In this document: piece by piece, positions 33,463 through 60,318 of the stretch
Position numbering within the stretch: position 1 is the first letter of the stretch
Layout of the letters: each line of letters starts with the position of its first letter
IMG/VR virus record: IMGVR_UViG_3300044701_000569
Span: 62,001 to 126,000 of that record
Reading direction: 5' to 3' (one strand)
DNA: 64,000 nucleotides
The notes under the pieces: model-generated
Databases searched by the model: none
The model's input: only the letters and a program-made list of their open reading frames with translations
What the model was told of the DNA's origin: nothing
Program-made: the position numbers and the translations under genes

Positions 33463-33490
33463 CTTATACTCCAGTATCCTTAGTTATTAA

Positions 33491-33498
33491 TATTTATC
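33491..33498 (-). promoter_or_regulatory. Late promoter box (GATAAATA)
   Basis: tatttatc upstream of the GGAG SD of the gene starting at 33462. Confidence 0.6.
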
Positions 33499-33500
33499 CA

Positions 33501-36500: not shown

Positions 36501-37481
36501 CTTAACTATGTCGCCAACTTTATAGCGTACAGCTTGTGCCCAGTCACCGATAAAATGTGTACCGTCATACACAGTGTCCCATTTTTCAATGTCAGCTTCT
36601 AATCCGCTTGACACTGTAGATGCACTGGTATGTCCTGTGTTGCATCTATAAACTATGCCACCGTATACTACTAGATCTCCTACTTTATATCTCGTACTAG
36701 TTAGCCAAACATTTTTCCAGTCTTCAGATTCAGTTACTTCTCTCCAGAAACGTTGATTGACTTCTAATCCTAGTGAAGCTAATATTGTTGAGGTATGGAT
36801 AGTTAAGCACTCGTATATTTTACCGCCATAACGTACTTTATCTCTTTCGTTGTAAAGTGTATTAAGTTGCCATGTGCCGCGCCAATGTGATCCTTCAAAC
36901 ATCAGCTCCCAAGTTGAACTTGTTGATGCAGCTATTGAGTTTCCGTAGCCTGTAGCAGCCTGTGACCAATAGTATAATGTGTTTGGAGTATCATCTTTAA
37001 TTTCAATCCTAACCTCTCTAAGACCAGCAGAAGAAAATCCTGAAACATATCCAGTAGCACTTACTTCAACATTGTCTAGATAATAAGTTACGTTTTTTGT
37101 ATAGTTACTGCCGCCGCCGTAAAATCCATTGGCTGTAGATGAAAAGTATAAAGGATGTTGACTTGCTGAAAAAGAAACGTTAGATGCATCATTTTGATTA
37201 AAAATATAAGGTCTACCCTTTTTAAGTGTTAAGTCAGGTCTTTCAACACCATTAATAAAAAACACATCAGCTGTGTCTGCTGTATTTCTAGCAACAGTTA
37301 CTACTAGATCTCTCGGTGTGCTACCAAAGTCAGTATAAAAAGCACTGCTCGAAGTATGCGAATCTAATGCTACATAGGCTTTGCCTGCATAATACACTAC
37401 ATCGTCTTTGGTATAGTCTGTAGCAGGTGCCCAGTTACCTGTCCATCTAAATTTAAGTCTATCTATTTTAAAATTAGCCAT
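33501..37481 (-). CDS. Giant fibre protein (1326 aa), paralogue of the 1824-aa protein
   Basis: Same N-terminal F(K)xxRxxFxW start, W-Y repeats, NKSPYIQNVTTFG and QVRLTGHDFLDIGTG domains. Confidence 0.75.
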   Translation of the reverse strand: MANFKIDRLKFRWTGNWAPATDYTKDDVVYYAGKAYVALDSHTSSSAFYTDFGSTPRDLVVTVARNTADTADVFFINGVERPDLTLKKGRPYIFNQNDASNVSFSASQHPLYFSSTANGFYGGGSNYTKNVTYYLDNVEVSATGYVSGFSSAGLREVRIEIKDDTPNTLYYWSQAATGYGNSIAASTSSTWELMFEGSHWRGTWQLNTLYNERDKVRYGGKIYECLTIHTSTILASLGLEVNQRFWREVTESEDWKNVWLTSTRYKVGDLVVYGGIVYRCNTGHTSASTVSSGLEADIEKWDTVYDGTHFIGDWAQAVRYKVGDIVKYGSTLWVANTEHTSTGFAANLANWTVYLEGLEFESIYDSSTYYQQGDVVWYGGYNYRAKQNNTNQNPVTASAYWQPVSERYTFDGDWAVGPAYEVGNVVRHRGYLYVAVADNTNEEPPNLSYWEIVSPSEAWRGLWITGISYKLGDLATYGSTTYVCKLAHTGSSPTRPDTDIAGSGTYWDVYVEGHSSNVLAAQGDILWYNSGAKDRFPKGSENELIKVSNGTTFDWDLFGNVSKVYYVATDGVDAAGRGTTLNEPWRTIKYACANITGPATIFIKTGVYEEELPISIPAGVALVGDELRSTIVQPAAGYESTDMFYVRNATGIRNMTLQGLFDTLSSPNEYFTQRPLNDVKFVSLDPGTGTGDSTVWITNKSPYIQNVTTFGTGCVGLKVDGSLHAGGNDSIVANDFTQVISDGIGCWITDLGRAELVSVFTYYCHVGYLATAGGKIRATNGNNSYGDYGSIAEGIDATETPITGSVNNRNFEAQIGYVFTDGDQILSLEYTNAGINYDSAAAYTFTGAGLNAAVSSANVVTNGIYEIRITDPYDSGTVGGTGYLIRQNYAQGGSGSSGTITLANSDESEESVYLGMKLVIISGAGVGQYGYISAYDPLTKIASISKESDDTSGWDHMLSGTPIVDPASTSRYQIEPRVIISVGTGTRATARVAIASGRIGSFRIINPGSGYLNQPTITVVDPNATSTGTWTARIGSGVLAQPTFSNRGTGYVTANATVTGVGLQDAFQTGSYIWVTGLTGQPGPGANVQFNGNSTVYRLVTIEDITGSLGNQSAKLRVSPRIDTYESPAHSSAITVRENYSQVRLTGHDFLDIGTGNFVETNYPGLPQNEPEAFRETNDAGGGRVFYTSTDQDGNFRVGELFKVEQATGIITLNADAFDLTGLTELRLGGVVLGGTGAVIREFSTDATLGANSNNIVPTQRALKTYIAAQIGGGGEDLNVSQLRAGQIIINNNQITSATGSIDFDAVARFTGGVEGSLLALAYFKR

Positions 37482-37492
37482 AGTTGTAACCT

Positions 37493-37870
37493 TTATTCTG
37501 TTCCGTCAGAGCTTATACCAGAAGGATATGTGTAAGCTGTATTCAATCTCATAACTAGATCACCGTCATCATTTATGTAGTAAAGAGCGTTTCTATCATC
37601 CCATCTGTACTGTTCATATACTAAGTTTTGATAAAGTAGGTCTCTGTCTTGATTTCGTCCTTCGAAGAAATCTTGACCTATTTCAAAATAAGGATAGTTG
37701 TCTTCTTCTGCACCGGGCTTGTTTACGCTAATTGAATCAGAATTATTTAATTGATCAACTTTACCAAAAAACAATTCTCCCTTGTCTGTTCTTCTAAATC
37801 CGTAGAAAAATCTGCTGCTGAGAGTAGCTGCTACAGAATCCGGAGTAAACCCAATATAATTTAATGACAT
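37493..37870 (-). CDS. Hypothetical virion-cluster protein
   Basis: 125-aa ORF tightly packed in the operon. Confidence 0.6.
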   Translation of the reverse strand: MSLNYIGFTPDSVAATLSSRFFYGFRRTDKGELFFGKVDQLNNSDSISVNKPGAEEDNYPYFEIGQDFFEGRNQDRDLLYQNLVYEQYRWDDRNALYYINDDGDLVMRLNTAYTYPSGISSDGTE

Positions 37871-37879
37871 AATTTTTCC

Positions 37880-38209
37880 TTATACGATATCTACGTAGCT
37901 TATCACAGCATCTAGCGCACTGTCTTGATCAGCCACCAACAACAATTGATTTAGCGGTGCTAGTATTAATTTTTCACCTGCACTTAATGCTCTTAAACTT
38001 GAGTGTGCTGGTATCATTACATCTCTAAGATAATAACCTTCAACACTGGTATCATCATGCACTAGAACACTTGCATAGACAATTCCAGAAGTTAAGTTAG
38101 CAAGACTTAGTCCAATTACAGTTGATCTTGTACCAGCATTAGTTTCAAGTGCAAGTATAGGTACTGTTCCTATTTCTTTAATTACTTTATTTTTAAACGT
38201 TGTTGCCAT
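37880..38209 (-). CDS. Small beta-sandwich virion adaptor protein
   Basis: MATTFKN, VIGLSLANL, AGEKLIL and VISYVDIV; similar to the ORFs at 27654 and 45212. Confidence 0.6.
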   Translation of the reverse strand: MATTFKNKVIKEIGTVPILALETNAGTRSTVIGLSLANLTSGIVYASVLVHDDTSVEGYYLRDVMIPAHSSLRALSAGEKLILAPLNQLLLVADQDSALDAVISYVDIV

Positions 38210-38213
38210 TCTT

Positions 38214-41200
38214 TTATCCTAATGTCAAAATATATTCAACTGCTAAATTTTCAGCGGCAGTAAAAGTAATAGCACCAGAACTACCTGCTACAGATACCCA
38301 ACTTACTCCGTCCCAGATTTCTAAATAGCTTTGATCAGTATTATATCTAACCATACCTAATTCTCTATACGGAGGAATAGGTCTTTCAGTATCTAAACCA
38401 ACTGGGACAACAAAACCTTTATTGCCCTCTATTTTAAAATAACCGGTACCACTGTTTCTAAAGTATGTTATACCGTTGTTAGTTCTATTTATAATAGATG
38501 AATCTTTAAATCCTAGTTCGTCAATAACAACTGAACCAATTCCATTAGCATTTAATAACAGATCTTGATTAAGTGTTGTAATACTAATAGTGTTATCGTC
38601 TATTGATATATCATCTACTTCAAATCTATCTGCTCTAAATCTAGCCGAAGTCATATCAGCAACTAAAGAGCCATCAGCATAAAATCTAATAGTATTATCA
38701 TTTGCACCAGGAGTTAATTCAGCAGTGATATAGGTGTTTAGATCTAAGTCGTAAACACCATTAAGTGCTATCCAATTTCCATCATACCCTTCAAACAGGT
38801 TAGTGTCAGTGTTGTATCTTATCATACCAACACTAGGTGTTCCTGGTCGTTCTGCTATAGATCCTGTGGGTAAATTAAATGCGCCCGTGGCATTTAATCT
38901 TACAGTTCCGCTAGCTGCATCTAGTATAATATCGCCTGTGGTGCTTGATATTGTATTGCCACTAATTACTAAATTACCAGTATTAATTTGTTCGCCAGTA
39001 ATTGTTGTTGTGCTAGCACCAGTTGTAATAGATATACCAGTACTAGTTTCAATATTAAATGTTGCACTAGTAAAGTTTACTGTACCCGTCTGTTGATCTA
39101 CAAAGAATAAATCACCAACTCTAAAATCACCATCATGATCAACTGAGCTATATCTTATTCTTGCATTGTTTAGTTCTATAACTTCGTTAGTTTGTATAAC
39201 AGTTAACGGATCGTTTGACGTTTCTTTTCCGTTACCTATATAAGCAAAGTTTTGACTAATTAGGTACATCAATACGCCCGGACCGTTTCCGTAAGCACCG
39301 TAATTTCCGTATACACAAGCACTGGCAATAGAACGAACCTCGCCACCAAAGTCAGTAAAGTCAACCAGTGTTATTGCTGTAGCAGTTGCGCCGCCACTAA
39401 ATCTAACATCCTGCACCTGTTGAGCATCGTCGTCAATAGTAATAGAGCTGTCTGTGCCGTTAAAATGTAGTAGCAGTACAGTGTATTGATCGCTTAGATA
39501 TTCTGCTGTAGGAACAGTAAAAGTACCTGAACTGCGGCCGCTACCTTTTGAAATTCTTACTTCGTCAATGCGTCCAGCAAATGCAAAACTTCCATTAGGG
39601 TCTGCACCTATTCTCACAGGGCGAGCTGCATAGCTATTAGCATCAACATAAGTAGAACCGACCTGTACGCCATTTATAAATGCTCGTGTATTGCCACTTA
39701 CTCTAGATAAACGCACATGTGTCCAAGTGCTAATAGGAACTGTTCCAACAGGGCCTATTCTAAAATTAAAATTGTAGTAGAAATAAAGCTGATTAGCATC
39801 TGTAAGACCTAAGACAATGCCGCCGCCATCACCGGGACTAGCAGTTCTTAGGTCAAAGATAGTTCTATACGTACCTGTTGTAGTTGGATACAACCATGCT
39901 TCTAAGCAAAAATCACCTGTACCAAATCCAAAATCAGCATGGGATGGATAAGAAATATAATCCCCTGTGCCATCAAGTTCTAAACTTGCTGTGCCAAACT
40001 TCTTAAGAGAAGTATCTAATCTAGCTTCATTTGCAATAGTTGCAGTCTTACCGGCTCTTTCAAGATAAGTTTCAAATCCCGTCTGCTTACCAGTTATATA
40101 AAATTTACCGTCAACGTCTTTACTTGCAATAGTACCTGTTGCTAGAACAGTTACTCCGTCAGTATCATAGTAGGTTACAGTTTCACCTGAATTAAATGTG
40201 CCTGTTACATTATCAACTCTTAGTGCTGTTTTACCTTGACCTTGTAGTCCTGTTGCACCATCAAAAGCGTACATGCCTCTGTTGGCAAAATATGTAAAGC
40301 AGTTGAGCCATTCAACTCTTGCACCGTTTGTAATTACCAGTGCATCTACACCGGGTGTGATAAAAGTTACTGAGTGAAATAAACAACTTGCTTCGCGTGA
40401 GCTTACACTAGCCACTGCACCATCAATGTACGCACCTTTGCCTGCATCACCCGCTGCAAATCCTCTAGGATCACTGCCGCTGGTTACAGAGCCTGATGTA
40501 ATAACTGATACGTTTCTAACATAAGGTGAACGACTGGTTACTGTAAATCCGGGCGCAAATTTAAACGCATATCCTGTAAAGAAATCTTTTACAGTTATGT
40601 CTTCAACTGTTACTTCACCGTTAAGTAGGAATGCGTCATTATTTTGTGTGGCAATGCTAGGCTTAATATTAACGCTTCTTAAACTGTGTCCTTTGACAGT
40701 TACGCCAGCTGGAACTGTAATTGGAAATGTTTCTGTATATGTTCCTGGATAAATGTGAATAGTATCACCAGCACCTGCTACTGTTACAGCGTGTGTTAGA
40801 CTAGCAAACGGAGCACTTGGATGATCACCGTCAAGCGAATCGCTTCCGTTTTCCGCAACATAGTAAATGTTACCCTGTCTTAGAGCTAGTTCTACTCCAT
40901 CAACTGTTAAGTTAGCGGTATTGATAGTTGCAGTGTCTGCATAGATATTATCTACATAGGCATTGCGCCATTGTTTGCCGCCTGTTGCTGGATCAGAACC
41001 TAGATCATAAGCATTTGAACTATCAGGAATTATGTTTGATACTATTTCAGCATTAAAGACTACATTATCAGTGTCTTGATTACCAATAGTAATGTTCCCG
41101 TCAGCAGTAATAGATCCTGTAGCTACTATGTTACCGTAAACATTTGTATCTGCAAATATCTCTACAGTACCTGTACCGTTTGGACGAAATTCTAAATTTT

Positions 41201-41552
41201 CATTGGATGTGTTTGTACTGATTATGTTATCTTCAATACTAACACTGTCAACAGTTAATTTGTTTTGATATACAACAGTATCAGCTGTACCTAACTCTAG
41301 TGTAGGCTGTGTTGTACTGATTGTGTTGCCTGAGAATGTAACATCAGCAATATTAGCTAATGTACTTACTGTTAGATTTGTACTGTAAACTGAACCGTTT
41401 ACATCTAGATCGTATTGAGGTGATGCTGTTCGTATACCGATACGGCTGTTGTTAACATCAAGATATAATAGATCAGTCTCAAAGGCCAGATTTACTCCCT
41501 CGCGAAGGAGGTTAGCCTTTAAGAGCGGACCACTAATACGACCAATAGCCAT
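38214..41552 (-). CDS. Fibre protein with beta-helix-like and LamG/ConA-like domains (1112 aa)
   Basis: GRISGPLL start, IYYVAENG, RSPYVRNVSV, FGTGDFCLEAW...GRIDEVRISKG and PxGxxxERP/GMIRYNTD motifs. Confidence 0.7.
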   Translation of the reverse strand: MAIGRISGPLLKANLLREGVNLAFETDLLYLDVNNSRIGIRTASPQYDLDVNGSVYSTNLTVSTLANIADVTFSGNTISTTQPTLELGTADTVVYQNKLTVDSVSIEDNIISTNTSNENLEFRPNGTGTVEIFADTNVYGNIVATGSITADGNITIGNQDTDNVVFNAEIVSNIIPDSSNAYDLGSDPATGGKQWRNAYVDNIYADTATINTANLTVDGVELALRQGNIYYVAENGSDSLDGDHPSAPFASLTHAVTVAGAGDTIHIYPGTYTETFPITVPAGVTVKGHSLRSVNIKPSIATQNNDAFLLNGEVTVEDITVKDFFTGYAFKFAPGFTVTSRSPYVRNVSVITSGSVTSGSDPRGFAAGDAGKGAYIDGAVASVSSREASCLFHSVTFITPGVDALVITNGARVEWLNCFTYFANRGMYAFDGATGLQGQGKTALRVDNVTGTFNSGETVTYYDTDGVTVLATGTIASKDVDGKFYITGKQTGFETYLERAGKTATIANEARLDTSLKKFGTASLELDGTGDYISYPSHADFGFGTGDFCLEAWLYPTTTGTYRTIFDLRTASPGDGGGIVLGLTDANQLYFYYNFNFRIGPVGTVPISTWTHVRLSRVSGNTRAFINGVQVGSTYVDANSYAARPVRIGADPNGSFAFAGRIDEVRISKGSGRSSGTFTVPTAEYLSDQYTVLLLHFNGTDSSITIDDDAQQVQDVRFSGGATATAITLVDFTDFGGEVRSIASACVYGNYGAYGNGPGVLMYLISQNFAYIGNGKETSNDPLTVIQTNEVIELNNARIRYSSVDHDGDFRVGDLFFVDQQTGTVNFTSATFNIETSTGISITTGASTTTITGEQINTGNLVISGNTISSTTGDIILDAASGTVRLNATGAFNLPTGSIAERPGTPSVGMIRYNTDTNLFEGYDGNWIALNGVYDLDLNTYITAELTPGANDNTIRFYADGSLVADMTSARFRADRFEVDDISIDDNTISITTLNQDLLLNANGIGSVVIDELGFKDSSIINRTNNGITYFRNSGTGYFKIEGNKGFVVPVGLDTERPIPPYRELGMVRYNTDQSYLEIWDGVSWVSVAGSSGAITFTAAENLAVEYILTLG

Positions 41553-41563
41553 CTCTTCTCCTC

Positions 41564-41660
41564 AATACGGGGATCCTGTCCCTCCAACCAAATTCTCATC
41601 CTTACGGCTCTTTGCTGGTTGACCACAGTTTGGTCCTGCGAGAGTTGGTCGCTCCTGCAT
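41564..41660 (-). promoter_or_regulatory. Structured 5' leader of about 100 nt (candidate cis-regulatory RNA)
   Basis: GC-rich non-coding stretch between a late box (41667-41674) and the SD, with several hairpins. Confidence 0.45.
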
Positions 41661-41666
41661 TAGTAG

Positions 41667-41674
41667 TATTTATC
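41667..41674 (-). promoter_or_regulatory. Late promoter box (GATAAATA)
   Basis: tatttatc on the plus strand just after the stop of the 996-aa gene. Confidence 0.6.
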
Positions 41675-41685
41675 GATTTTTGGAT

Positions 41686-44676
41686 TTAACCTAAGACAAG
41701 GGTGTAAATATCAAGAATTTCACCCATAAGTTCTGCAGTAACAATTTCGCCTTCGCCTGCTGATCTCTGCCACTCGCTGCCGTTCCAAGTTTCAAGATAG
41801 TCTCTGTCAGTATTCCAGCGTGTAGTTCCTTGTGGTGGAACTGAGGGACGTTCTACATCTGTACCTGTAGGAATTACTAGTCCCCGAACATTATCAAACA
41901 CTAGATAACCATTATTAGTATGACTAACACTTAGATTATTATTACTAGTATTATCTATAACATTATCGTATACAGCTAAATCATCAAAATATACAACTCC
42001 AGTTCCGTTAGCTTCTAGTTCTAAATTTGAATTAGAAGTTGATGTTGTAATTAGGTTATTCTGAATTAAAATATCTCCGGTATACAATCCAGTTAACTGT
42101 ATTGCACCTGGTATTACTCTACCTGCTTCTATGCTATTTGCAGTAAAAATAATGTGTCCTTGAAGGTTGTTAGCATTAATACTTGTATTTCTATTTTCAC
42201 TGAATACTCCATTAAAAGTAGTTGTAGTAGTACTATATCCTTCAAATCGTTGCGAAGTTGTATTATAACGTATATCCGACTGTTCAGATATACGCTGTGC
42301 TGTAGTTCCTCTAGGAAGTATTATATTTGAATTACTAGATACATTTAAAAAACCAGATCCAGGATTCCATATTAGGTCACCGTTTACTGTTACTACAGAA
42401 TTTCCGCTGAATCTAATATTACCTATATCAATGCGTTCGCCGTCAATGTAAGTAATTTCTCCGCCAGTGTTTATAACTATTGCACTTACGCCACTAAAGT
42501 CAATACTGCTAGCATCAATACTAGTTTCACCTGTATCAAAGTCTACGTAGAATACGTTCCCAACTCTAAATGTCCCTCTAGCATCTGTTGACACATAATA
42601 GATTTTTCCGCTGTTTAGTTCTACAGCTTCTTGATCTCTTAGCGTTAGCGTTGAATCGTTATTTGCTTCTGTGCCGGCGCCTATGTATGCAAAGTTTTGT
42701 CCTATTAGATACATCAGCGTGTCTGCACCGTCTGCTACAGCACCGTAATTTCCGTATACACTGGCCGATCCAATAGAACGAATTTCTGCTCCAAACTCTG
42801 TGCCTAAATTTGCAAAGCCTGCTGATCCCTGTAGTGCATACAATCCTCTGTTTGCAAAATATGTAAATGAGTTAAGCCATTCTACCCTCACGCCATTTGT
42901 CATAGTAATACAATCAACACCTGGAGTTATAAATGTAGCACTGTGAAACAGCATACTTGCTTGTGTGCTGGCACTGTTTAATTCACTACCGTCAATCCAT
43001 GCTCCGGCTCCTGCTGGAATCGCAGACGTTGTTGCAGGAGAAGAAAAAATTGGAATTCCTGAAGCAGGAACTAAAGACGTAGTTACATATATTCTCCACA
43101 TGTTAGTATTAATAGGATCTTCAATTACGTAATCTACAACATAAAGAACACCGTTATTATTAATAGACCAATCTGCGCCAACTACAGTATTAAAATCTGA
43201 AGGTAAGTTAGTTTTATAATAAGCTACCCAAGGTTCTCCAACAGAAGCTCCTGTAGTATCATAGTCATTAGGTGGAAGAATAAAAGTTGTTCCGCTAGGA
43301 TATATGGAAAAAGAATAACCTTGCTGCAAGGAATCGAACGGTTCAGCTAAAATAAGATTCCATAACGTTGTTGGATCTGCCGGTGACGGTTCGTATCCTG
43401 TGATTGTATAAAACGTAACAGGAGATAAAGGACCAAAATGAGTTGCCATTGTTTTTCCAACCCAGCTTTGCACTAGTGCTTCGCTATGTCCAGATTTAGT
43501 TACAGTTATTCCATATGTGTCGAAAGATAGGCCGAGGCCTTCTGGATCAACATAAACTTCTCCAGGCGCAGTTGACGCTGCTGTTTCTGCTGTTATAACA
43601 CTTACGTTTCTTACATACGGGCTACGTTCATTAATAATTGCTCCAGAAGCAAATCTAAATGCATAGCCTGTGTTATTTCCGCTATCAAACGTAAAATCTC
43701 TAACAGTTATATTTTCAACTAGAGTATTTTGATTTAAATGAAATATGTCTTCGCCCTGACTAGCAGTGTTTGGACTTATTATTGTATTCCTTAAATCTTC
43801 GCCAGTGATAGTTGTATTCTGTGGAACTATTAGAGGAGTAGTTTCTTCATACTCTCCGGGATAGATATGTATTGTTACAGGGCCTGCTGTGCTGCCGTCT
43901 GCGACTGCAAGAGCATGGGCTATTGTTCTAAACGGACCTTGAGGATGATCACCTACATTTGTGTCATCACCATTTACGGCAACAAAAAAAGTGTTGCCTG
44001 GTCTAGTTGCTAGACTAGCATCTTCAACAACTACAACATTAGATACTAAGTTATTACCAATTAAATTGTTGGTATATAAATTTCTCCAACGTTTTACACT
44101 AGTACCTAAGTCGTAGGTTGACGTAGCATCTGGTATAATGTGGCTGTTAATATCTGCATTAAAATCTACACTGTCAGTATTGTCATTACCTAAAGTTAAT
44201 GTTCCGCCAAAAGTTATATCGCCTGTTGCGTGTAAACTTCCAGTAACATTTGTATTAGCATGTATTTCTAATGTACCAGTACCGTCGGGTCTAATTTCTA
44301 CATTAGAATTAGGTACAGTGGTACCAATAGAATTAAAATTTATATCAAGATCGTCTGTGCGAAGATTAGATAATTTAATTTGATTAGCTGCATTTAAAAA
44401 CATGTTGCCTGGTGCAACATTAATTGCTCCAGACTGTATTGTAAAATTAGCAACTTTTAAGTCTACGTCTTGTATTAGATGACTGGCGCCCAGCGTAGTT
44501 GCTACTTCAAGAACATCTATAGGACTTTCAGTATTAACACCAATTCTAGCTGTGTTTACTTTGAGCTGTAGTAATGCAGTGTCTAGTGTTTCGTTTTTAA
44601 AATTTAAATCAACACCGTTTCTTACAAGGTTGTCTTGTAAAACTCCACCACTGATTCTACCTATTTGCCCTGCCAT
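41686..44676 (-). CDS. Fibre protein (996 aa), paralogue of the 1112-aa protein
   Basis: GRISGGVL start, RSPYVRNVSV, SMLFHSATFITPGVD and RVEWLNSFTYFANRG shared with the downstream paralogue. Confidence 0.7.
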   Translation of the reverse strand: MAGQIGRISGGVLQDNLVRNGVDLNFKNETLDTALLQLKVNTARIGVNTESPIDVLEVATTLGASHLIQDVDLKVANFTIQSGAINVAPGNMFLNAANQIKLSNLRTDDLDINFNSIGTTVPNSNVEIRPDGTGTLEIHANTNVTGSLHATGDITFGGTLTLGNDNTDSVDFNADINSHIIPDATSTYDLGTSVKRWRNLYTNNLIGNNLVSNVVVVEDASLATRPGNTFFVAVNGDDTNVGDHPQGPFRTIAHALAVADGSTAGPVTIHIYPGEYEETTPLIVPQNTTITGEDLRNTIISPNTASQGEDIFHLNQNTLVENITVRDFTFDSGNNTGYAFRFASGAIINERSPYVRNVSVITAETAASTAPGEVYVDPEGLGLSFDTYGITVTKSGHSEALVQSWVGKTMATHFGPLSPVTFYTITGYEPSPADPTTLWNLILAEPFDSLQQGYSFSIYPSGTTFILPPNDYDTTGASVGEPWVAYYKTNLPSDFNTVVGADWSINNNGVLYVVDYVIEDPINTNMWRIYVTTSLVPASGIPIFSSPATTSAIPAGAGAWIDGSELNSASTQASMLFHSATFITPGVDCITMTNGVRVEWLNSFTYFANRGLYALQGSAGFANLGTEFGAEIRSIGSASVYGNYGAVADGADTLMYLIGQNFAYIGAGTEANNDSTLTLRDQEAVELNSGKIYYVSTDARGTFRVGNVFYVDFDTGETSIDASSIDFSGVSAIVINTGGEITYIDGERIDIGNIRFSGNSVVTVNGDLIWNPGSGFLNVSSNSNIILPRGTTAQRISEQSDIRYNTTSQRFEGYSTTTTTFNGVFSENRNTSINANNLQGHIIFTANSIEAGRVIPGAIQLTGLYTGDILIQNNLITTSTSNSNLELEANGTGVVYFDDLAVYDNVIDNTSNNNLSVSHTNNGYLVFDNVRGLVIPTGTDVERPSVPPQGTTRWNTDRDYLETWNGSEWQRSAGEGEIVTAELMGEILDIYTLVLG

Positions 44677-53974: not shown

Positions 53975-56900
53975 TTAGAATGACGTAACGTCTCTATTTG
54001 CAACATCTACACCAGTGCCGCGTTTGGTGTTCTTTTCAATCTTATCACTGATTTCTTTCATTTGTTGCAGTAGTTCAACCATTCTCGTCATTGTACCATT
54101 TAATTGTTCTGTATTGCCGGCACCTGTACTTGTATTTACACTAATGTTCTTTAATATGTCCCCAGCATTGGCTTTAGAATCGCCCATACCAAATAACCCG
54201 CCTCTGTTTTCATTAGCTAATTCTTTGTTAAGATCTGCTAGAGTTCTTGTTAAATCTCTCAATGCTGTATTGTAGGATGATAGTTTAGTTGCATCAAGTC
54301 CATTTAGAGCTGTTAGTGTAGTTTGTAGATTTTGAACATTTGCAATTGATTGTAAGCCGGCAGCAGTTTGTTGTAGTCCACCATTACTACCAATAGTTGC
54401 TAGTCTGCCCAAGCTAGCTACTGAATCAGGCGGTATTGAAAGATTAGCAGTGCCTTGGCCACCACCTTTAAAAGCATTTAGTGCATTTCCAAACGCTGCC
54501 ATTGCTTCTGCATTTGCTTTTATTCGCTGTGCGTCAATGCGCAACTCGCCAAACTGTCTCATACTGTCCCATGGCATCTGTTGACTGCCACCAAAGAAAC
54601 TTCTTAACCCTTCAAGTAATCCTCCGCTTCGTGTTCCATCTATTTGCGGAACTTTACTCAAAGCATCACCGAATGCTGCCATTGCTTCAGCATTAGTCTT
54701 AATTTTATCAACTGGTAATGTAAGCTGACCAAATGCAACTGCTTGTGCCCATGGTACTTGTTGAGAACCCATAAAGAAGTTTGCTACAGCACCAATTAAT
54801 CCGCCAGTGCGTTCACCATTCACAGTAGGAATATTACTCATAGCTTCAGCAAATGCTTTTACTGCAAGACTGTTTTGCTGCATCTTAGTAGCATCTAGAT
54901 TGTAAGATTGAAATTCTACCATCTTAGCGTATGGTAATTTTACTTCGCCGCCGAAGAAACCAACTAAACCGTTAACAGCATTAGCAACTAAATTACCTAG
55001 TGCTCCTGTTGCGCCACCAGAACCCATTGATGACATTGCCTTTGAATAAGCTACAACAGCATTTGCATTAGCTTCAACTCTTGCTGCATCAATATTAAGT
55101 TGAGAAAATTCTTGCAGTTTATCAAACGGAGTTTTACCGCCAAACAAACTTGTAATGCCTTCTGCAAGGCCTCCTAGCATTCCGCCAAGACCAGACACAA
55201 CGCTTGAAGCACCCATAGCAGCCATTGCTAAACTGATTGCTCCAATACCTTTACCAACCTGTATTAAATTGTTGCCATCAAGCTCGGCAAATTTCTGCAT
55301 ACCTTCTGCAAAGGTTGGAAGAGCTTTTCCTACTAGCCATGTAGCGCCAGCAATGCCTGCACCTATTACAACTATAGCACCACTTAGTATACCAGCGCCT
55401 ATTAGTATTTGCGGATTAGCAAATGCACCAAGACCCTTAGCTAATCCTTCTAGTATTCCGCCAAGACCTTTGCCGATTCCCTTACCAATTTCACCTACTG
55501 TTTTTCCAAATTCAGCAAAACCTCTAGCAACTCCTGTTAATAGTTTTTGTATTCCAGCACCAACAGATTTTAGTGCTTGACTTGCTGATACTGCTGCGTT
55601 GCCTGCGCCTGCTGCTGCACCACCTGCGGCATTAGCTGCTGCACCACCTGCAATATTTGCGCCTGCTGTTGGGGCGGCTCTAGCACCAAAGCCGCCCATC
55701 ATTTTACTTGCTATATTATCAGTTACTCCGCTCAGACCTCTACCAAGAGCTCCTATTACAGATTTCGCTAGGAACAGAGCACCAATACCTGCTACCATTG
55801 CAGCTACTACAGTACCGTTAGTAAATATTCCTTTAATAGCATCGCCAACTAATCCTAGTACTGCTGGTAAAAATCCGTCTACTTTTACTGATTCAGTAAA
55901 TGCTTTTATAGAGTCTGCCATGCCTGATATTAAGTCAGCGGCCCTGTTTATGCCTATAGCAAATAATTCTATTAATCCACTGTCAATAAAAGCTGTTTGA
56001 ATAGCTGAACTTAGTTTTCTAATTGAATCTTGAAATGTAGTTAATGCTGTAGTAGTTTCGTTTTCTTTCTTTGCTTCTTCCTCAGCTGCGGTAATATTTA
56101 GATTACTTACCTCTAACATAGATCTGTTGTTGTCGATAAGACCTCTTAGTACAGGATCAACTTGCCCTAATGCTCCAAGGAAAGCAGCGTCTCGCGCACC
56201 GCCTTTTGTAAATCGATTTTCTAATGTTTCGCTGGTTCTTCTTAGAGCGTCTTGCAGAATTCTTGGATCAGCACCTTGACCAACCTTCATCATTGCATCT
56301 CTTAATTCAGGACCAGCTTGAGCTAAAAGTTTTTGTGCTGCTTCAGTATTAGCTACGCCGTCGGCTAGATCTTTTAGAGCATCGCCAGTTTCTTTTGGCA
56401 GCTTGTTTATCATATCCATGCTTCTTTGAAAGTTTTGAGCTTGTATACTTCCTTCTTCAAACTGATTTGCCAGTGCTCTAAACGATGCGTCGGCGGCTTG
56501 CGCGGCTCGTTGATCCATTAATTCTTTACGACTCTGGCCTGTTAGTTTAGCCATCATATCAAGTTCTTTAAGATAGCTTGCCGAGCCAGCTGCTAGTTCC
56601 TGTGTACTTTTGCCTTGAAGCCTTCCTAGTCTACTCTGTAATTCAACATAGCTAGCCATACCTTCATTAATTTCTGATATACTAAATCCCATACCTTTGA
56701 GTTGTTCAAAAGTACCTGTATCCTTTAAAGCATTGTTCATAGCGGTAAATCGCTGAACACCTTGAGTAACAGTACCTCCAAATTTAGCAAACGTCTGTGA
56801 GTTATTACGTACCAAGGTTGAAAATTCTTCTAGAGTAAGACCGTTCTGTGCTGCTGCACGACGCATGGCTACGATGTCGTTGTTAAACCCTGCACCTACA

Positions 56901-57349
56901 GAACTTAATTCTCTAAATGCGTCAACAGACTTATCTAAGTACCCTGCCATTGCTCCTAGCAAAGATCCAACAATAGGAACCTGCGAAGCATAAGCTGCCA
57001 TTGAATCTTCACCTGCTAGTAATGAACGAGTCATACCTGCAAGGCTGGCCATTACTTGGCCAACGCCACGCATGGCCAGCGCACCAAAGCCTTTAGCTAA
57101 ATTAGATGCTGCTTCTGTTGTCTTATTAGTAGCTGCGGTTTGTGCTGTAGTAGCTGCGGTTTGTGTTGTAGTAGCTGTTGTTCCTGCTTGTTGAGCTTTG
57201 TTGTACATTTCTTGTACTTTGGAACCAGAACCACGTTGGCCTTTCTGTCCTCCCATTCGTTCAATAGCACGAACTAGAGCCAACAGAGTGGCTTCGCTGG
57301 CTACGCCACTTTCACCACCTACATTACCAATAATTACTTCATCAGCCAA
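53975..57349 (-). CDS. Tail tape measure protein
   Basis: 1124 aa, Ala/Gly-rich and helical, with hydrophobic stretches and imperfect internal repeats. Confidence 0.75.
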   Translation of the reverse strand: MADEVIIGNVGGESGVASEATLLALVRAIERMGGQKGQRGSGSKVQEMYNKAQQAGTTATTTQTAATTAQTAATNKTTEAASNLAKGFGALAMRGVGQVMASLAGMTRSLLAGEDSMAAYASQVPIVGSLLGAMAGYLDKSVDAFRELSSVGAGFNNDIVAMRRAAAQNGLTLEEFSTLVRNNSQTFAKFGGTVTQGVQRFTAMNNALKDTGTFEQLKGMGFSISEINEGMASYVELQSRLGRLQGKSTQELAAGSASYLKELDMMAKLTGQSRKELMDQRAAQAADASFRALANQFEEGSIQAQNFQRSMDMINKLPKETGDALKDLADGVANTEAAQKLLAQAGPELRDAMMKVGQGADPRILQDALRRTSETLENRFTKGGARDAAFLGALGQVDPVLRGLIDNNRSMLEVSNLNITAAEEEAKKENETTTALTTFQDSIRKLSSAIQTAFIDSGLIELFAIGINRAADLISGMADSIKAFTESVKVDGFLPAVLGLVGDAIKGIFTNGTVVAAMVAGIGALFLAKSVIGALGRGLSGVTDNIASKMMGGFGARAAPTAGANIAGGAAANAAGGAAAGAGNAAVSASQALKSVGAGIQKLLTGVARGFAEFGKTVGEIGKGIGKGLGGILEGLAKGLGAFANPQILIGAGILSGAIVVIGAGIAGATWLVGKALPTFAEGMQKFAELDGNNLIQVGKGIGAISLAMAAMGASSVVSGLGGMLGGLAEGITSLFGGKTPFDKLQEFSQLNIDAARVEANANAVVAYSKAMSSMGSGGATGALGNLVANAVNGLVGFFGGEVKLPYAKMVEFQSYNLDATKMQQNSLAVKAFAEAMSNIPTVNGERTGGLIGAVANFFMGSQQVPWAQAVAFGQLTLPVDKIKTNAEAMAAFGDALSKVPQIDGTRSGGLLEGLRSFFGGSQQMPWDSMRQFGELRIDAQRIKANAEAMAAFGNALNAFKGGGQGTANLSIPPDSVASLGRLATIGSNGGLQQTAAGLQSIANVQNLQTTLTALNGLDATKLSSYNTALRDLTRTLADLNKELANENRGGLFGMGDSKANAGDILKNISVNTSTGAGNTEQLNGTMTRMVELLQQMKEISDKIEKNTKRGTGVDVANRDVTSF
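57128..57177. repeat. 21-bp tandem coding repeat, about 2.4 copies
   Basis: agtagctgcggtttgtg(c/t)tgt units encoding T(T/A)QTAAT in the tape measure N-terminus. Confidence 0.7.
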
Positions 57350-57427: not shown

Positions 57428-58306
57428 ATGGCAGATTTTAACCCGCTAATGGCAGGCAAGCAACAGTCAAACCCACTACAGAAGTATTTTAGACAACCTA
57501 AAGTTTATATTACTTTACCCAGCAAGGGTAAATTTTATAAACCCGGCGCTGTTGATCTTCCGGAGAACGGAGAACTACCAGTCTTTCCTATGACTGCTAA
57601 GGATGAACTAACGCTAAAGACACCCGATGCTTTATTAAATGGACAAGCTACTGTTGATGTAATACAAAGCTGTATTCCTGCTATTAAAGATGCGTGGCAG
57701 ATGCCATCAATTGATCTTGATGCAGCATTAATTGGTATAAGAATTGCTACCTATGGCGATAAATTAGATCTTACAACAAAAATTCCTGGTCTTAATGAAG
57801 AAAGAGAATTTAGTGTTGATTGTAAGACACTGCTTAACAAGTTAGTTACTAAAGAATTTGTTGATACTATTGAATACAACAATATGGTTGTTAAGATACG
57901 TCCATTAAATTATAGAGAATTTACTACTAACAGCATTAAAACTTTTGAAGAACAAAGAATTTTCGCTCTAGTTAATGACGGTAAGATGAGTGAAGAAGAA
58001 AAGTTATCTAAATTTAATGAAAGTTTTAAAAAGCTAACAGAGCTTACTGTAGATACAATGGGTAAAACTATTGTAAGTATAACAGTTGACGATGTTATAG
58101 TAACTGATAGAAATCATATTCAAGAATTTCTAACTAATACAGATAAAAACTTTTATAGTGCAATTTTAGAACACATTGAACAGCAGAAAGAACTGTTTAG
58201 TATTGAACCGCTCAAAGTTGAATGTTCAGACGAAGACGTTGAACGTGGTGCTCCTGAAAGATTTGAAGTTCCTATTACATTTGATCAATCAAATTTTTTC
58301 GGATAA
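57428..58306 (+). CDS. gp26: Baseplate hub / tail assembly protein (gp26-like)
   Basis: VYITLPSKGKFY, PMTAKDE and IDLDAALIGIRIATYG motifs. Confidence 0.75.
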   Translation: MADFNPLMAGKQQSNPLQKYFRQPKVYITLPSKGKFYKPGAVDLPENGELPVFPMTAKDELTLKTPDALLNGQATVDVIQSCIPAIKDAWQMPSIDLDAALIGIRIATYGDKLDLTTKIPGLNEEREFSVDCKTLLNKLVTKEFVDTIEYNNMVVKIRPLNYREFTTNSIKTFEEQRIFALVNDGKMSEEEKLSKFNESFKKLTELTVDTMGKTIVSITVDDVIVTDRNHIQEFLTNTDKNFYSAILEHIEQQKELFSIEPLKVECSDEDVERGAPERFEVPITFDQSNFFG

Positions 58307-58311
58307 GGATC

Positions 58312-58530
58312 TTGCCCTGGTCTCTTGACGAGATTCTAGACGAGGTCCGTAATTTTGAAAATCAACAAAAAGAATTAAAGCACGATCTGTTTAAGGTCTG
58401 CTGGTACATGCGCGGCGGCATAACTCTTGAAGAGGCTTACAACTTGTGTGCCGAAGATAAAGAAATTATTGGAAAAATAATTAAGGAAAACCTAAACACT
58501 ACTAAAGAGTCAGGTCTTCCTTTCTTTTAA
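58312..58530 (+). CDS. gp51-like ORF, probably the -1 frameshift extension of the upstream gene
   Basis: WYMRGGITLEEAYNL segment; poor TTG start; the frame is open back to the T TTT TTC heptamer at 58294-58300. Confidence 0.6.
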   Translation: MPWSLDEILDEVRNFENQQKELKHDLFKVCWYMRGGITLEEAYNLCAEDKEIIGKIIKENLNTTKESGLPFF

Positions 58531-59354
58531 ATGTAGTTTATGCCGACAACTTCGTTGGTGTTTTCGACTAAACGAATACGTAATCCTAGATCAGCCCAAC
58601 CTAAGTTGTACTCTCTAAGCATCTTAGTAATAGCATAATACACGCTCTGTGTTAAGAAACGCTCGCCCTGCTTGGCATTTGCTGTCCAAGCTGGCTGAAG
58701 TTTAGAAATATCATATCCTGCTTTAGCAAAATTCATAATCTTTTGAGCAGCAAACACACCACTCTCCTTGTCGCCCTTGGCTAGTTTAGCTAGATCAGCT
58801 TGTATGCCTTGTGACATCTTGTCAGGCAGTGGTTTTGTTCCACTTTGAACTGTACGTATGTTGCTTTTAGCCTTTTCAAACGAATCACTACCAGCTTTAT
58901 TAGCTGGATTAGCAGAGGCAGCTGGATCGTTAAGTGTAGGTTCTACTCTACTGCCAGTAGGTGCAGTAGCTTTAGCTGGTGCTGCTGTAGCAGCAGCTGG
59001 CTTAGCAGGAGCCGCAGCAGTTGTTGGAGCACTAGCTGGCTTAGCAGGAGTTTGTAGTGCTGTAACTACAGATTTTTGATCCTGTGGTGAAAGAGATTTT
59101 AGAACATCAAGGGCTTTTTGTGCAGCTGGCGGAAGTTGAACATTACCTTGTTCGTCATCACCAGCACCTGCTACAGTTGATTTACCAGCTTGATAGCCTT
59201 TTTTAAGGGCACTACCTAAACCAGCTACTCCTCCAGCAACAGCACCAGCAGCTTTAGCAGCAGTTCCTACGCCTTTACCGATAGCAGAACCTATTTTATT
59301 TAAAACCGGTCCTTCTACTAGTTCAGATTCATTTGTAATATCAGAAATTTTCAT
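58527..59354 (-). CDS. Ala/Pro-rich candidate internal head protein
   Basis: MKISDITNESELVEG N-terminus with an L-x-E site, a low-complexity linker and a late box at 59383-59390. Confidence 0.5.
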   Translation of the reverse strand: MKISDITNESELVEGPVLNKIGSAIGKGVGTAAKAAGAVAGGVAGLGSALKKGYQAGKSTVAGAGDDEQGNVQLPPAAQKALDVLKSLSPQDQKSVVTALQTPAKPASAPTTAAAPAKPAAATAAPAKATAPTGSRVEPTLNDPAASANPANKAGSDSFEKAKSNIRTVQSGTKPLPDKMSQGIQADLAKLAKGDKESGVFAAQKIMNFAKAGYDISKLQPAWTANAKQGERFLTQSVYYAITKMLREYNLGWADLGLRIRLVENTNEVVGINYI

Positions 59355-59877: not shown

Positions 59878-60318
59878 TTAAGTGTTGGTATGATTTGCCT
59901 GTTCTAGAAGTGCCTTACGCAATTTATCGGAACCGCCCACTCTACAATTAATAATTCCGTTATAATATTCATCCGTCTCTAACACACGGCGGTCAAATTG
60001 CTCTCTTGCCTCGATATATGACATTTCTGCCTTGGAAGTGCAGTAGTAAAGTATTTCTCTAGTGAAGTTTTCTGGACCTAATTGTGCAACGTCAGCGTTG
60101 AGTCTATCGGATGAACCCCAATAATCACGCCAGTCGCTTTCTACAGTGGAACGCCTTTTGAGTTTTTTGCCTTTTAGCGGAGGTTTTGTACGTTTGAATT
60201 GTGCAAGTTTTTTGCCTATGTACTTTTGTCCAGTTTTTAGATTGGTTATAAGGTAAACAAAGCCTATTTTGCCTTCTGGTATTTGTTCAACGATGTTACC
60301 TTGATAAGTCCACTGCAT
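59878..60318 (-). CDS. GIY-YIG (Seg-like) nuclease
   Basis: GFVYLITNLKTGQKYIGKK, YWGSS, FTREIL, EAREQF and YYNG motifs. Confidence 0.85.
   Translation of the reverse strand: MQWTYQGNIVEQIPEGKIGFVYLITNLKTGQKYIGKKLAQFKRTKPPLKGKKLKRRSTVESDWRDYWGSSDRLNADVAQLGPENFTREILYYCTSKAEMSYIEAREQFDRRVLETDEYYNGIINCRVGGSDKLRKALLEQANHTNT

What the first reader, a model, noticed from the sequence alone, without database searches (positions are those of the whole stretch)
58289..58530. Programmed -1 frameshift fusing the gp26-like and gp51-like genes
Seen: the 292-aa ORF ends TCA AAT TTT TTC GGA TAA, containing the canonical X XXY YYZ heptamer T TTT TTC (58294-58300). The -1 frame is open from there (F-R-I-R-I-L-P-W...) into the 72-aa ORF, whose only start is a TTG with its SD-like AGGA just 2 nt away. 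The pair is adjacent to the tape measure gene. Known: tail assembly chaperones G/GT of lambda and many other phages are made by such a frameshift next to the tape measure gene; I do not know of this for T4 gp26/gp51. Inference: these genes are G/GT-type chaperones.
Basis: partly seen in the sequence, partly recalled or inferred. Interest (0 to 1): 0.6.

Follow-up and report, generated by a model that had tools for sequence, protein, structure and literature searches.

The report
Frameshift in phage tail chaperone gene
A jumbo T4-type phage almost certainly makes a short and a long form of its gp26-like tail/baseplate assembly chaperone by a conserved -1 ribosomal slip at T TTT TTC; this is real, but the principle was published for T4-like phages in 2022.

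Summary
The 292-aa PF12322 (T4 gp26/gp51 family) ORF ends ...AAT TTT TTC GGA TAA. The heptamer lies in phase at 58294-58300, and the -1 frame is open from 58285 to 58530.

One heptamer alone is no evidence: the window holds 18, against about 19 expected by chance. The comparative evidence is decisive:
- The in-phase heptamer is invariant in all 76 distinct relatives examined, down to 28% protein identity. These include Atu_ph07, Phosso, PA5oct, XaC1, BF17 and 7t3.
- It recurs as T TTT TTY in cyanophages, KVP40, Melnitz and pf16.
- Wobble-position variation switches from the 0 frame to the -1 frame exactly at the heptamer.
- Start codons in the downstream ORF are not conserved. PA5oct has none, and the window's TTG is a Leu codon in most relatives.

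Phages with this arrangement carry one PF12322 gene. T4 and Acj9 carry two: short gp26 and long gp51. The gp51 C-terminal extension matches the cyanophage-type -1 ORF (hhalign E 1e-10).

[quoted passage not shown] The window is a new member, in an uncultured jumbo lineage.

Still inferred: that the divergent 1124-aa neighbour is the tape measure, and any structural kinship to lambda gpG.

The parts
57428..58306 (+). gp26-like ORF (short, 'TAC-N' product, 292 aa, about 33 kDa); 0-frame stop TAA at 58304-58306
   Evidence: PF12322 T4_baseplate E 1.5e-7, 31.8 bits against a cut-off of 24.5. phrog_150 baseplate hub E 1.4e-12. It is the only PF12322 gene in the 357,559-bp genome. AF2 model has mean pLDDT 85.5.
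58294..58300 (+). slippery heptamer T TTT TTC in X XXY YYZ phase
   Evidence: Read directly. Invariant and in phase in 76/76 distinct relatives. Also present in 78 of 81 cyanophage loci and in KVP40; Melnitz and pf16 have T TTT TTT.
58300..58530 (+). -1-frame extension: 76 sense codons from CGG at 58300, stop TAA at 58528-58530. With residues 1-291 of the upstream ORF it gives a 367-aa fusion (about 42 kDa) with junction ..SNFF|RIRILPW..
   Evidence: Frame open; fusion length computed. The -1 peptide FFR[IVM][RK][IVL]L is conserved from the slip site. Wobble periodicity is in the -1 frame from +7 onward. AF2 gives a mainly helical domain: a short N-terminal helix plus three further helices, pLDDT 89.9.
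58312..58314 (+). TTG listed as the start of the 72-aa ORF; most likely an ordinary Leu codon
   Evidence: At this codon the 70 distinct close relatives have TTG 20, TTA 19, CTG 12, CTA 9, CTT 3 and other 7. 24 of 70 have no ATG/GTG/TTG in -1 codons 3-12. PA5oct has no canonical start in its first 40 -1 codons.
58306..58313 (+). 5' arm (AGGAUCUU) of a candidate stimulatory stem, starting 5 nt after the heptamer; it contains the 'SD-like' AGGA
   Evidence: RNAalifold consensus stem. For the 8-bp version, 87.8% of cells are paired, against at most 52% when the partner is slid. There are 15 double-sided changes against 6.0 expected, and 0 of 500 shuffles reach the covariation score.
58330..58337 (+). 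3' arm (GAGAUUCU) of the candidate stem
   Evidence: AGG to AAA (Arg to Lys) changes in the 5' arm are accompanied by synonymous ATC CTA to ATT TTA changes in the 3' arm.
53975..57349 (-). divergently transcribed 1124-aa protein; putative tail tape measure (inferred)
   Evidence: No Pfam, PHROG or NCBIfam hit. Homologous to the positional orthologue in Phosso, E 1e-7 over 500 aa. The order portal - this gene - gp26-like is conserved in Phosso, PA5oct, XaC1, BF17 and 7t3. The PA5oct orthologue is flagged as found in virions by MS. 27 of 30 named ESM-Atlas look-alikes are tape-measure families. No T4 gp29 match in the genome.

Best explanation
The gp26-like gene at 57428-58306 is the tail/baseplate-hub assembly chaperone gene of a T4-core jumbo phage, and it is decoded in two ways.

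Most ribosomes terminate at TAA 58304-06 and make the 292-aa short form, the equivalent of T4 gp26 or lambda G.

A minority slip back one nucleotide. This happens when tRNA-Phe occupies both the P-site codon TTT and the A-site codon TTC of T TTT TTC (58294-58300). Both tRNAs can re-pair with TTT TTT in the -1 frame. These ribosomes then read CGG ATA AGG... to the TAA at 58528-30 and make a 367-aa long form, the equivalent of T4 gp51 or lambda GT. A stem starting 5 nt downstream (58306-13 pairing with 58330-37) probably pauses the ribosome over the site.

Shown here by comparison: the slippery site, its phase, and -1-frame coding from the slip site onward are under strong purifying selection.

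Inferred: the slip is ribosomal; its efficiency is low; the short and long forms cooperate in assembling the hub, tape measure and tube; neither stays in the virion.
For: 1. Family. The ORF belongs to PF12322 and phrog_150. T4 gp26 and gp51 are both PF12322 paralogues.

2. Slippery site. The heptamer is present in phase in all 86 evaluable homologous loci, and all 7 nucleotides are invariant in the 76 distinct sequences among 85 of them. These include six cultured jumbo phages at 28-35% identity. The 0-frame stop lies 3, 9, 12 or 33 nt downstream.

3. Frame switch. The least-conserved codon phase changes from the 0-frame third position upstream (mean 0.58) to the -1-frame third position downstream (mean 0.57), exactly at the heptamer. 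The codon after the heptamer is GNN (Gly/Ala/Glu/Val) in the 0 frame but is CGN = Arg in the -1 frame in every relative except PA5oct (CAG, Gln).

4. No conserved start. The first canonical start in the -1 ORF ranges from codon 4 to 39 or is absent. The -1 ORF is unannotated in PA5oct and truncated in the Atu_ph07, XaC1 and 7t3 annotations.

5. Wider distribution. The same layout occurs in P-SSM2 and 77 further cyanophage loci, and in KVP40, Melnitz and pf16.

6. Gene count. There is one PF12322 gene in every frameshift-type genome tested (9) and two in T4 and Acj9.

7. Identity of the extension. The cyanophage-type -1 ORF matches the C-terminal extension of full-length gp51: hhalign probability 96.9%, E 1.3e-10, and tblastn hits at the 3' end of gene 51 in Acj9, IME13 and SJ_PmiM. 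An alignment of fusion proteins aligns with gp51 straight through the junction (E 7e-4).

8. RNA structure. The window's lineage has a covarying stem. Atu_ph07 and Phosso have strong but different structures (z -6.3 and -4.2).

9. Literature. gp26 and gp51 are listed as hub assembly chaperones (PMC3004832). The paper titled as identifying the TAC genes of T4-like phages (Vladimirov 2022) is relayed as describing a short gene plus a long fusion gene, and poly-T slippery sites in TAC-N genes (PMC10885494 and PMC12846349).
Against: - There is no direct expression evidence for this phage or any relative.
- Some relatives have an ATG at or beside the 0-frame stop (Atu_ph07, Phosso, BF17, KVP40). 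Cyanophages have a conserved ATG at -1 codon 6 (61 of 66). An independently initiated small protein may therefore also exist in those lineages.
- BF17, 7t3 and PA5oct show no significant downstream structure.
- The link between the window's own extension and the gp51 C-domain is weak: hhalign E 1e-3 to 3e-3, probability 11-19%.
- No fold or sequence similarity to lambda-type chaperones or to any solved structure was found.
- The tape-measure identity of the neighbour is inferred.
Confidence: 0.88

Rival explanations
1. Two separate proteins and no fusion: the downstream ORF is translated on its own, from TTG 58312 or by termination-reinitiation at the overlapping stop. On this view the -1 phase merely reflects ATGA/TAATG-type gene overlaps.
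For: Atu_ph07 and Phosso have ATG overlapping TGA, and BF17 and KVP40 have TAATG. Cyanophages keep an ATG at -1 codon 6, and their annotations call the small ORF a separate 'gp51'.
Against: - The window has ATA where those phages have ATG. Its TTG has a 2-nt spacer after AGGA and is a Leu synonym in 43 of 70 relatives.
- 24 of 70 relatives have no start in -1 codons 3-12, and PA5oct has none in its first 40 -1 codons.
- Gene overlap does not explain the invariance of three wobble positions in the heptamer, or the conservation of the -1 peptide upstream of any start. In 7t3 and XaC1 that conservation runs over 11 codons of overlap with the 0 frame.
- T4 gp51 carries the extension in frame.
Confidence: 0.06
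2. The fusion is made by transcriptional slippage: RNA polymerase adds one U in the T6 run, which gives mRNA in which the two ORFs are in frame. The protein would be identical to the frameshift product.
For: The site is a homopolymeric T run (T6; T7 in pf16 and T8 in Melnitz). The products of the two mechanisms cannot be told apart from sequence. No RNA reads could be examined.
Against: Six T is shorter than the runs of about 9 or more that are known to give efficient slippage by bacterial RNA polymerase (my knowledge of the field, not tested here). The C at heptamer position 7 is conserved in the jumbo and cyanophage groups. There is a covarying stem 5 nt downstream, at the spacing typical for ribosomal -1 frameshifting.
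Confidence: 0.05
3. Chance juxtaposition: an FF motif at the C-terminus happens to be encoded TTT TTC next to an unrelated small ORF.
For: TTTTTTC is not enriched in the window (18 observed, 19 expected). FF is a conserved protein motif even in T4 gp26, where it is encoded by non-slippery TTC TTT.
Against: The conservation is at nucleotide level across more than 150 loci in several phage families. Phase and -1 ORF are conserved, and the slippery layout always goes with a single-copy PF12322 gene.
Confidence: 0.01

Closest known systems
T4 gp26 / gp51 (hub assembly chaperones; reported as the tail assembly chaperones of T4-like phages by Vladimirov, Gautam & Davidson, Virology 2022, PMID 34826709)
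   Same: Same Pfam family for the N-domain (PF12322). There is a short form that ends just after a conserved FF motif, and a long form that continues with a C-terminal extension of about 50-75 aa.
   Different: T4 encodes the two forms as separate, divergently transcribed paralogous genes, and the FF codons of gene 26 are not slippery (TTC TTT). The window has one gene plus a frameshift. The window's lineage has also lost both CxxC zinc-knuckle motifs. I could not read the primary paper. Its content is taken from two citing papers, and I do not know whether it covers jumbo phages.
Cyanophage and KVP40-type gp26 + small 'gp51' gene pairs (P-SSM2 PSSM2_014/015; KVP40.0328/0327)
   Same: Identical layout: a single PF12322 gene, in-phase T TTT TTC one codon before the stop, and a small ORF in the -1 frame.
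   Different: Their -1 ORF is shorter (59-68 codons from the slip) and is clearly homologous to the gp51 C-domain (E 1e-10). The window's 78-codon extension matches it only weakly (E about 1e-3). Cyanophages also keep a conserved ATG at -1 codon 6. In KVP40 and pf16 the gene follows the tail tube gene.
Lambda gpG / gpGT, and the equivalents P2 gpE/E+E' and Mu gp41/42 (my knowledge of these; Xu, Hendrix & Duda 2004 is cited)
   Same: [quoted passage not shown] The proteins are needed for tail assembly but are absent from virions.
   Different: No sequence or structural similarity was detected. The heptamer differs (lambda uses G GGA AAG, from my knowledge). The gene here is not in the tube-chaperone-tape measure order; it is transcribed divergently from the putative tape measure gene.
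E. coli dnaX -1 frameshift (A AAA AAG plus downstream stem-loop; abstract of PMC4344849)
   Same: A bacterial-type -1 frameshift on a homopolymeric heptamer, with a downstream RNA structure a few nucleotides away.
   Different: No upstream internal Shine-Dalgarno element is visible here. In dnaX the shifted product is the shorter one, not the longer.

Membership tests
T4-like tail/hub assembly chaperone family (gp26/gp51; PF12322 with or without PF28602) | N-terminal PF12322 (T4_baseplate) domain | tested here: met
   P0001 scores 31.8 bits, E 1.5e-7, against a cut-off of 24.5, and covers profile positions 9-200 of 219. phrog_150 E 1.4e-12.
T4-like tail/hub assembly chaperone family (gp26/gp51; PF12322 with or without PF28602) | Long isoform carries the gp51-type C-terminal domain (PF28602 on gp51 homologues) | tested here: inconclusive
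   PF28602 is not in the local Pfam copy. The window-lineage extension against the gp51 C-extension gives hhalign E 0.003, and against cyanophage-type extensions E 0.0012 (probability 11-19%); both align the same G..[ST]L..[EA]...[LM][SP]..[ED]R motif. The cyanophage-type extension against the gp51 C-extension is solid (E 1.3e-10). The position, directly after the FF motif, is the same.
T4-like tail/hub assembly chaperone family (gp26/gp51; PF12322 with or without PF28602) | Two products, short and long, with a common N-terminus | tested here: met
   Met by comparative inference only: conserved heptamer, conserved phase and -1 coding from the slip site. There is one PF12322 gene here, against two in T4 and Acj9. 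No protein-level data.
T4-like tail/hub assembly chaperone family (gp26/gp51; PF12322 with or without PF28602) | Required for hub/tail assembly but absent from the finished virion | not testable with these tools
   Indirect only. The PA5oct orthologue gp336 lacks the ESI-MS/MS virion flag that both of its neighbours carry. The T4 literature says gp51 is not in the particle.
Lambda-type tail assembly chaperones gpG/gpGT | Programmed -1 frameshift near the 3' end giving N and NC isoforms | tested here: met
   See (comparative evidence, not experimental).
Lambda-type tail assembly chaperones gpG/gpGT | Gene lies between the tail tube gene and the tape measure gene, on the same strand | tested here: not met
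   In the window the gene is transcribed divergently from the putative tape measure gene, and no tube gene is adjacent. In KVP40 and pf16 the orthologue does follow the tube gene directly, with a large unannotated ORF downstream.
Lambda-type tail assembly chaperones gpG/gpGT | Sequence or fold similarity to known tail assembly chaperone families | tested here: not met
   No chaperone family in the Pfam, PHROG or NCBIfam hits. Foldseek against the PDB gave nothing at E <= 0.001. VIA-align found only generic helical-hairpin matches, Z <= 8.2 over residues about 158-215. A profile search of PDB sequences was empty. A missing match does not prove that the folds differ.
Lambda-type tail assembly chaperones gpG/gpGT | N-domain binds the tape measure protein; C-domain of the long form binds the tube protein | not tested
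   I sent no complex prediction. The tape measure (1124 aa) exceeds the size limit together with the chaperone. The tube gene was not securely identified: there is only a weak PF06841 hit, E 0.016, just outside the window.

The most novel reading that the evidence does not exclude
Two readings go beyond what I could confirm as published.

1. The T TTT TTY frameshift may be the ancestral way of making the chaperone pair across the whole T4-core superfamily. That would include the Rak2/PA5oct/Atu_ph07-type jumbo phages and this uncultured lineage, each with its own stimulatory RNA structure. The separate gp26 and gp51 genes of T4 would then be a derived duplication.

2. The PF12322 fold shows no detectable kinship to lambda-type chaperones. 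The short/long frameshift strategy may therefore have arisen independently, by convergence, in this family.
Probability: 0.35. Interest if true: 0.5.

Novelty: new member of a known kind. Interest (0 to 1): 0.35.

Why it matters
The result corrects annotation across a large group of phages. In PA5oct the -1 ORF is not annotated at all. In Atu_ph07, XaC1 and 7t3 it is truncated. In the other relatives examined it is called a separate gene: a hypothetical protein, or 'gp51' in the cyanophages. The real product is most likely a 360-370-aa fusion.

It also ties the long-puzzling T4 hub 'catalyst' gp51 and gp26 to the general short/long chaperone logic of long-tailed phages. It extends that logic to jumbo phages with T4-type cores.

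Finally, it offers a clean natural series for studying how a U6-type bacterial frameshift site is tuned: the same heptamer with different downstream RNA structures, or with none. For the field this is confirmation and extension of a 2022 paper, not a new principle.

Tried and rejected
- Heptamer enrichment in the window: none (18 observed, 19 expected). The single-sequence argument therefore carries no weight.
- HMM of the extension against gp51 sequences: not significant (best E 0.028 in a 90-sequence database). Only profile-profile comparison, and the route through cyanophage intermediates, gave signal.
- BLASTP of the window's extension against T4 gp51: nothing.
- Pfam, PHROG and NCBIfam on the extension: nothing meaningful.
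- Pfam PF28602, which is carried by gp51 homologues, could not be queried because it is not in the local library.
- The 1124-aa neighbour against T4 gp29: BLASTP E 0.77, and no gp29 match in the genome. tblastn against the phage records was empty. Pfam on its orthologues, and on the large ORFs downstream of the chaperone in KVP40, pf16, P-SSM2 and Melnitz, was empty.
- Fold searches of the 292-aa model against the PDB (Foldseek and VIA-align wide) gave no specific match. The extension model matched only small uncharacterised phage proteins in BFVD, best E 5e-3, TM 0.74-0.81. PDB sequence-profile searches were empty.
No reads were laid, so transcriptional slippage could not be tested.
- The first alignment for the search for related loci was too divergent.
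- I sent no complex-prediction job, because there was no well-founded domain pair within the size limit.
- The primary 2022 paper is not held.
Full report
**1. What is in the sequence**

ORF 57428..58306 (+) encodes 292 aa and ends ...TCA AAT TTT TTC GGA TAA.
- T TTT TTC lies at 58294-58300 in the X XXY YYZ phase.
- The -1 frame has a TGA at 58282-84 and is then open from 58285 to the TAA at 58528-30.
- A -1 slip gives the junction ..SNFF|RIRILPW.. and a 367-aa product.
- The only canonical start near the beginning of the -1 ORF is TTG 58312, 2 nt after AGGA. The next is an ATG at codon 39.

On its own the heptamer means nothing: the window holds 18 copies of TTTTTTC, against 19.0 +/- 4.2 in shuffles.

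**2. What the genes are**

The 292-aa protein is a member of PF12322 (T4_baseplate; E 1.5e-7, above the cut-off) and of phrog_150, 'baseplate hub'. The window comes from a 357,559-bp virus record, and this is its only PF12322 gene.

The surrounding genes are T4-core genes:
- portal gp20, prohead protease and major head protein
- baseplate wedge and fibre genes
- gp46/47-like nuclease and the gp55 late sigma factor

The closest cultured relatives of the gp26-like protein are jumbo phages, at 28-35% identity: Atu_ph07, Phosso, PA5oct, XaC1, the PBECO4/BF17 group and 7t3. The order portal - large structural protein - gp26-like - small ORF is conserved in Phosso, PA5oct, XaC1, BF17 and 7t3.

**3. 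Comparative test of the frameshift**

I fetched six cultured jumbo-phage loci and 80 IMG/VR loci (54-73% identity).

*Slippery site.* All 86 evaluable loci carry TTTTTTC in phase at the 3' end of the gp26-like ORF, followed by a -1 ORF of 72-79 codons that is open from the heptamer.
- Among 76 distinct sequences, all seven heptamer nucleotides are invariant.
- The invariant positions include three 0-frame wobble positions.
- The 15 preceding 0-frame wobble positions have consensus frequencies of 0.40-0.93.
- The 0-frame stop sits 3, 9, 12 or 33 nt after the heptamer.

*Frame switch.* The least-conserved codon phase changes exactly at the heptamer. Upstream it is the third position of the 0 frame (mean conservation 0.58). 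Downstream it is the third position of the -1 frame (0.57). The codon after the heptamer is GNN in the 0 frame (Gly, Ala, Glu or Val). In the -1 frame it is CGN = Arg in every relative except PA5oct (CAG, Gln).

*Peptide conservation.* The -1 peptide FFR[IVM][RK][IVL]L... is conserved from the slip site onward, even at 15-35% identity. In 7t3 and XaC1 it is conserved where it overlaps 11 further codons of the 0 frame.

*Start codons are not conserved.*
- The window's TTG codon is TTG in 20 of 70 distinct close relatives, another Leu codon in 43, and something else in 7.
- 24 of 70 have no ATG/GTG/TTG in -1 codons 3-12.
- PA5oct has no canonical start in the first 40 -1 codons and no annotated gene there.
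- Where Atu_ph07 and Phosso have ATG overlapping the stop, the window has ATA.

Together these results are what a programmed -1 frameshift predicts. Independent initiation does not predict them.

**4. RNA context**

In the window's lineage an 8-bp stem starts 5 nt after the heptamer: 58306-13 AGGAUCUU pairs with 58330-37 GAGAUUCU.
- 87.8% of cells are paired, against at most 52% when the 3' partner is slid.
- There are 15 double-sided changes, against 6.0 expected.
- No shuffle out of 500 reaches the observed covariation score.
- Arg-to-Lys changes (AGG to AAA) in the 5' arm go with synonymous changes in the 3' arm.

The 'SD-like AGGA' is thus better read as part of this stem.

Atu_ph07 and Phosso have a different and much stronger long-range structure, starting 2-3 nt after the heptamer (z -6.3 and -4.2). 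BF17, 7t3 and PA5oct show none that stands out. The stimulator therefore seems to be lineage-specific. The shuffle control does not correct for relatedness of the sequences, so I rate the stem as probable, not proven.

**5. Link to T4 gp26 and gp51**

T4 has two PF12322 genes.
- gp26 (208 aa) ends ..EFFELL*, with the FF encoded by non-slippery TTC TTT.
- gp51 (249 aa) is a paralogue of gp26 (BLASTP E 2e-6). Its PF12322 match ends at residue 201 (..DVFK), followed by a 48-aa extension.
- gp51 homologues carry a second Pfam domain, PF28602, which is not in the local library.

The cyanophage P-SSM2 has gp26 followed by a 57-aa gene annotated 'gp51' in the -1 frame.
- Its junction reads ..CAG AGT TTT TTC GTA TAA. 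This is the same heptamer, in the same phase, one codon before the stop.
- 78 of 81 related cyanophage loci show the same layout; the other three contigs probably end too early.
- KVP40 has GAT TTT TTC GTA TAA. Melnitz and pf16 have T TTT TTT.

A profile of these -1 ORFs matches the C-terminal extension of T4-type gp51 with hhalign probability 96.9%, E 1.3e-10. tblastn of the P-SSM2 -1 ORF lands on the 3' end of full-length gene 51 in Acj9, IME13 and Proteus SJ_PmiM.

Gene counts fit this picture.
- One PF12322 gene: the window's genome, Atu_ph07, Phosso, PA5oct, BF17, KVP40, P-SSM2, Melnitz and pf16.
- Two PF12322 genes: T4 and Acj9.

For the window's own lineage the link is weaker.
- Extension against gp51 C-extension: E 0.003.
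- Extension against cyanophage-type -1 ORFs: E 0.0012.
- The whole-fusion alignment aligns with gp51 through the junction at E 7e-4.
- The same G..[ST]L...[LM][SP]..[ED]R motif aligns each time.

I take the homology of the extension as likely, not shown.

**6. Function**

The T4 literature lists gp26 and gp51 as hub assembly chaperones. It says gp51 is required but absent from the particle (PMC3004832). In PA5oct both neighbours of the gp26-like gene are flagged as virion proteins by MS, and the gene itself is not.

The divergent 1124-aa neighbour has no family hit. It is homologous to its positional orthologue in Phosso (E 1e-7). 27 of its 30 named ESM-Atlas look-alikes are tape-measure families, at score 0.93, which is a lead and not a proof. 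Its sequence has Gly/Ala-rich hydrophobic stretches and tandem repeats of about 55-60 aa, as many tape measures do. There is no T4 gp29 match.

In KVP40 and pf16 the chaperone gene directly follows the tail tube gene and precedes a large unannotated ORF. That is the classic tube - chaperone - tape measure order.

The AF2 model of the 292-aa protein is confident (pLDDT 85.5). The extension is mainly helical, with a short N-terminal helix and three further helices (pLDDT 89.9). Neither model has a specific match among solved structures. The protein therefore works like G/GT, but I cannot file it in the lambda-type chaperone family.

**7. Prior art**

My first literature searches found nothing that links gp26 or gp51 to frameshifting. 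[quoted passage not shown]'. The paper is not held. Two citing papers describe its content:
- Some T4-like phages carry one short gene and one longer fusion gene instead of frameshifting (PMC10885494).
- Poly-T slippery sequences occur in the TAC-N genes of T4-like phages (PMC12846349).

The concept is therefore published. I cannot tell whether the jumbo lineages, the exact heptamer statistics or the RNA structures are covered there.

**8. Rivals**

- Independent initiation or reinitiation as the only route is unlikely (0.06). It may coexist with the frameshift in lineages that have an ATG at the overlap.
- Transcriptional slippage on T6 would give the same protein and could not be tested (0.05).
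- Chance is excluded by the conservation.

**9. Verdict**

It is a new member, in an uncultured jumbo-phage lineage, of a kind described in 2022. The practical consequence is re-annotation of many phage genomes. The reads tools could not be used.

Noticed in passing
window 54457-55177 (-), residues about 725-965 of the 1124-aa protein: About four tandem repeats of roughly 55-60 aa. Each has an FFGG/LFGG..P[WYF] motif followed by a ..NA.A..AF..A[LM]S helix. Repeats like these in a tape measure would set tail length. Read by eye from the translation.
   Followed up: no
window 57428-58306 (residues about 118-125 and 266-275), compared with L001-L006 and T4: Cultured jumbo phages and T4 gp26/gp51 keep two CxxC zinc-knuckle-like motifs. 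The window's protein and its IMG/VR relatives have lost both: KIPGLNEE and ECSDEDVERG stand in their place.
   Followed up: partly
L003:3834-4061 (PA5oct); L001:5995-6231 (Atu_ph07); L004:3813-4031 (XaC1); L006:3858-4076 (7t3): Public annotations miss or truncate the -1 ORF. PA5oct has no gene annotated there. Atu_ph07 gp687 starts at an internal ATG (40 aa). XaC1_326 and 7t3_0448 start about 20 codons after the slip site.
   Followed up: yes
L001:5995-6084 and L002:5905-5994: Atu_ph07 and Phosso share a long-range stem (GAGGCUCUU(U)G ... CAA(A)GAGCC) that encloses an inner hairpin, directly after the heptamer (z -6.3 and -4.2). The one-base length difference in the 5' arm is matched in the 3' arm.
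   Followed up: partly
gp51 homologues P0008-P0099: Nearly all T4-type gp51 homologues carry a precomputed second Pfam domain, PF28602, besides PF12322. The family is newer than the local Pfam copy and could not be queried. It is probably the gp51 C-terminal domain.
   Followed up: partly
window 58527-59354 (-): A 275-aa Ala/Pro/Gly-rich ORF converges on the extension ORF. Its end overlaps the stop of the extension ORF by 4 nt. It has no Pfam or PHROG family.
   Followed up: no
window 22622-24421 (-), 59878-60318 (-), 27988-44676 (-): Other content of the window: a Nol-like carbamoyltransferase (phrog_1601, E 2e-167); a 146-aa ORF that hits 'NAD synthetase' and homing-endonuclease phrogs; and four very large paralogous baseplate-wedge or tail-fibre genes of 996-1824 aa.
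   Followed up: no
G000:C1:61532-61681 (-), just upstream of the window (L182): The only, and weak, match to the T4 gp19 tail-tube family PF06841 in the genome (E 0.016, below the cut-off). It lies in a 446-aa open frame next to the start of the window.
   Followed up: no
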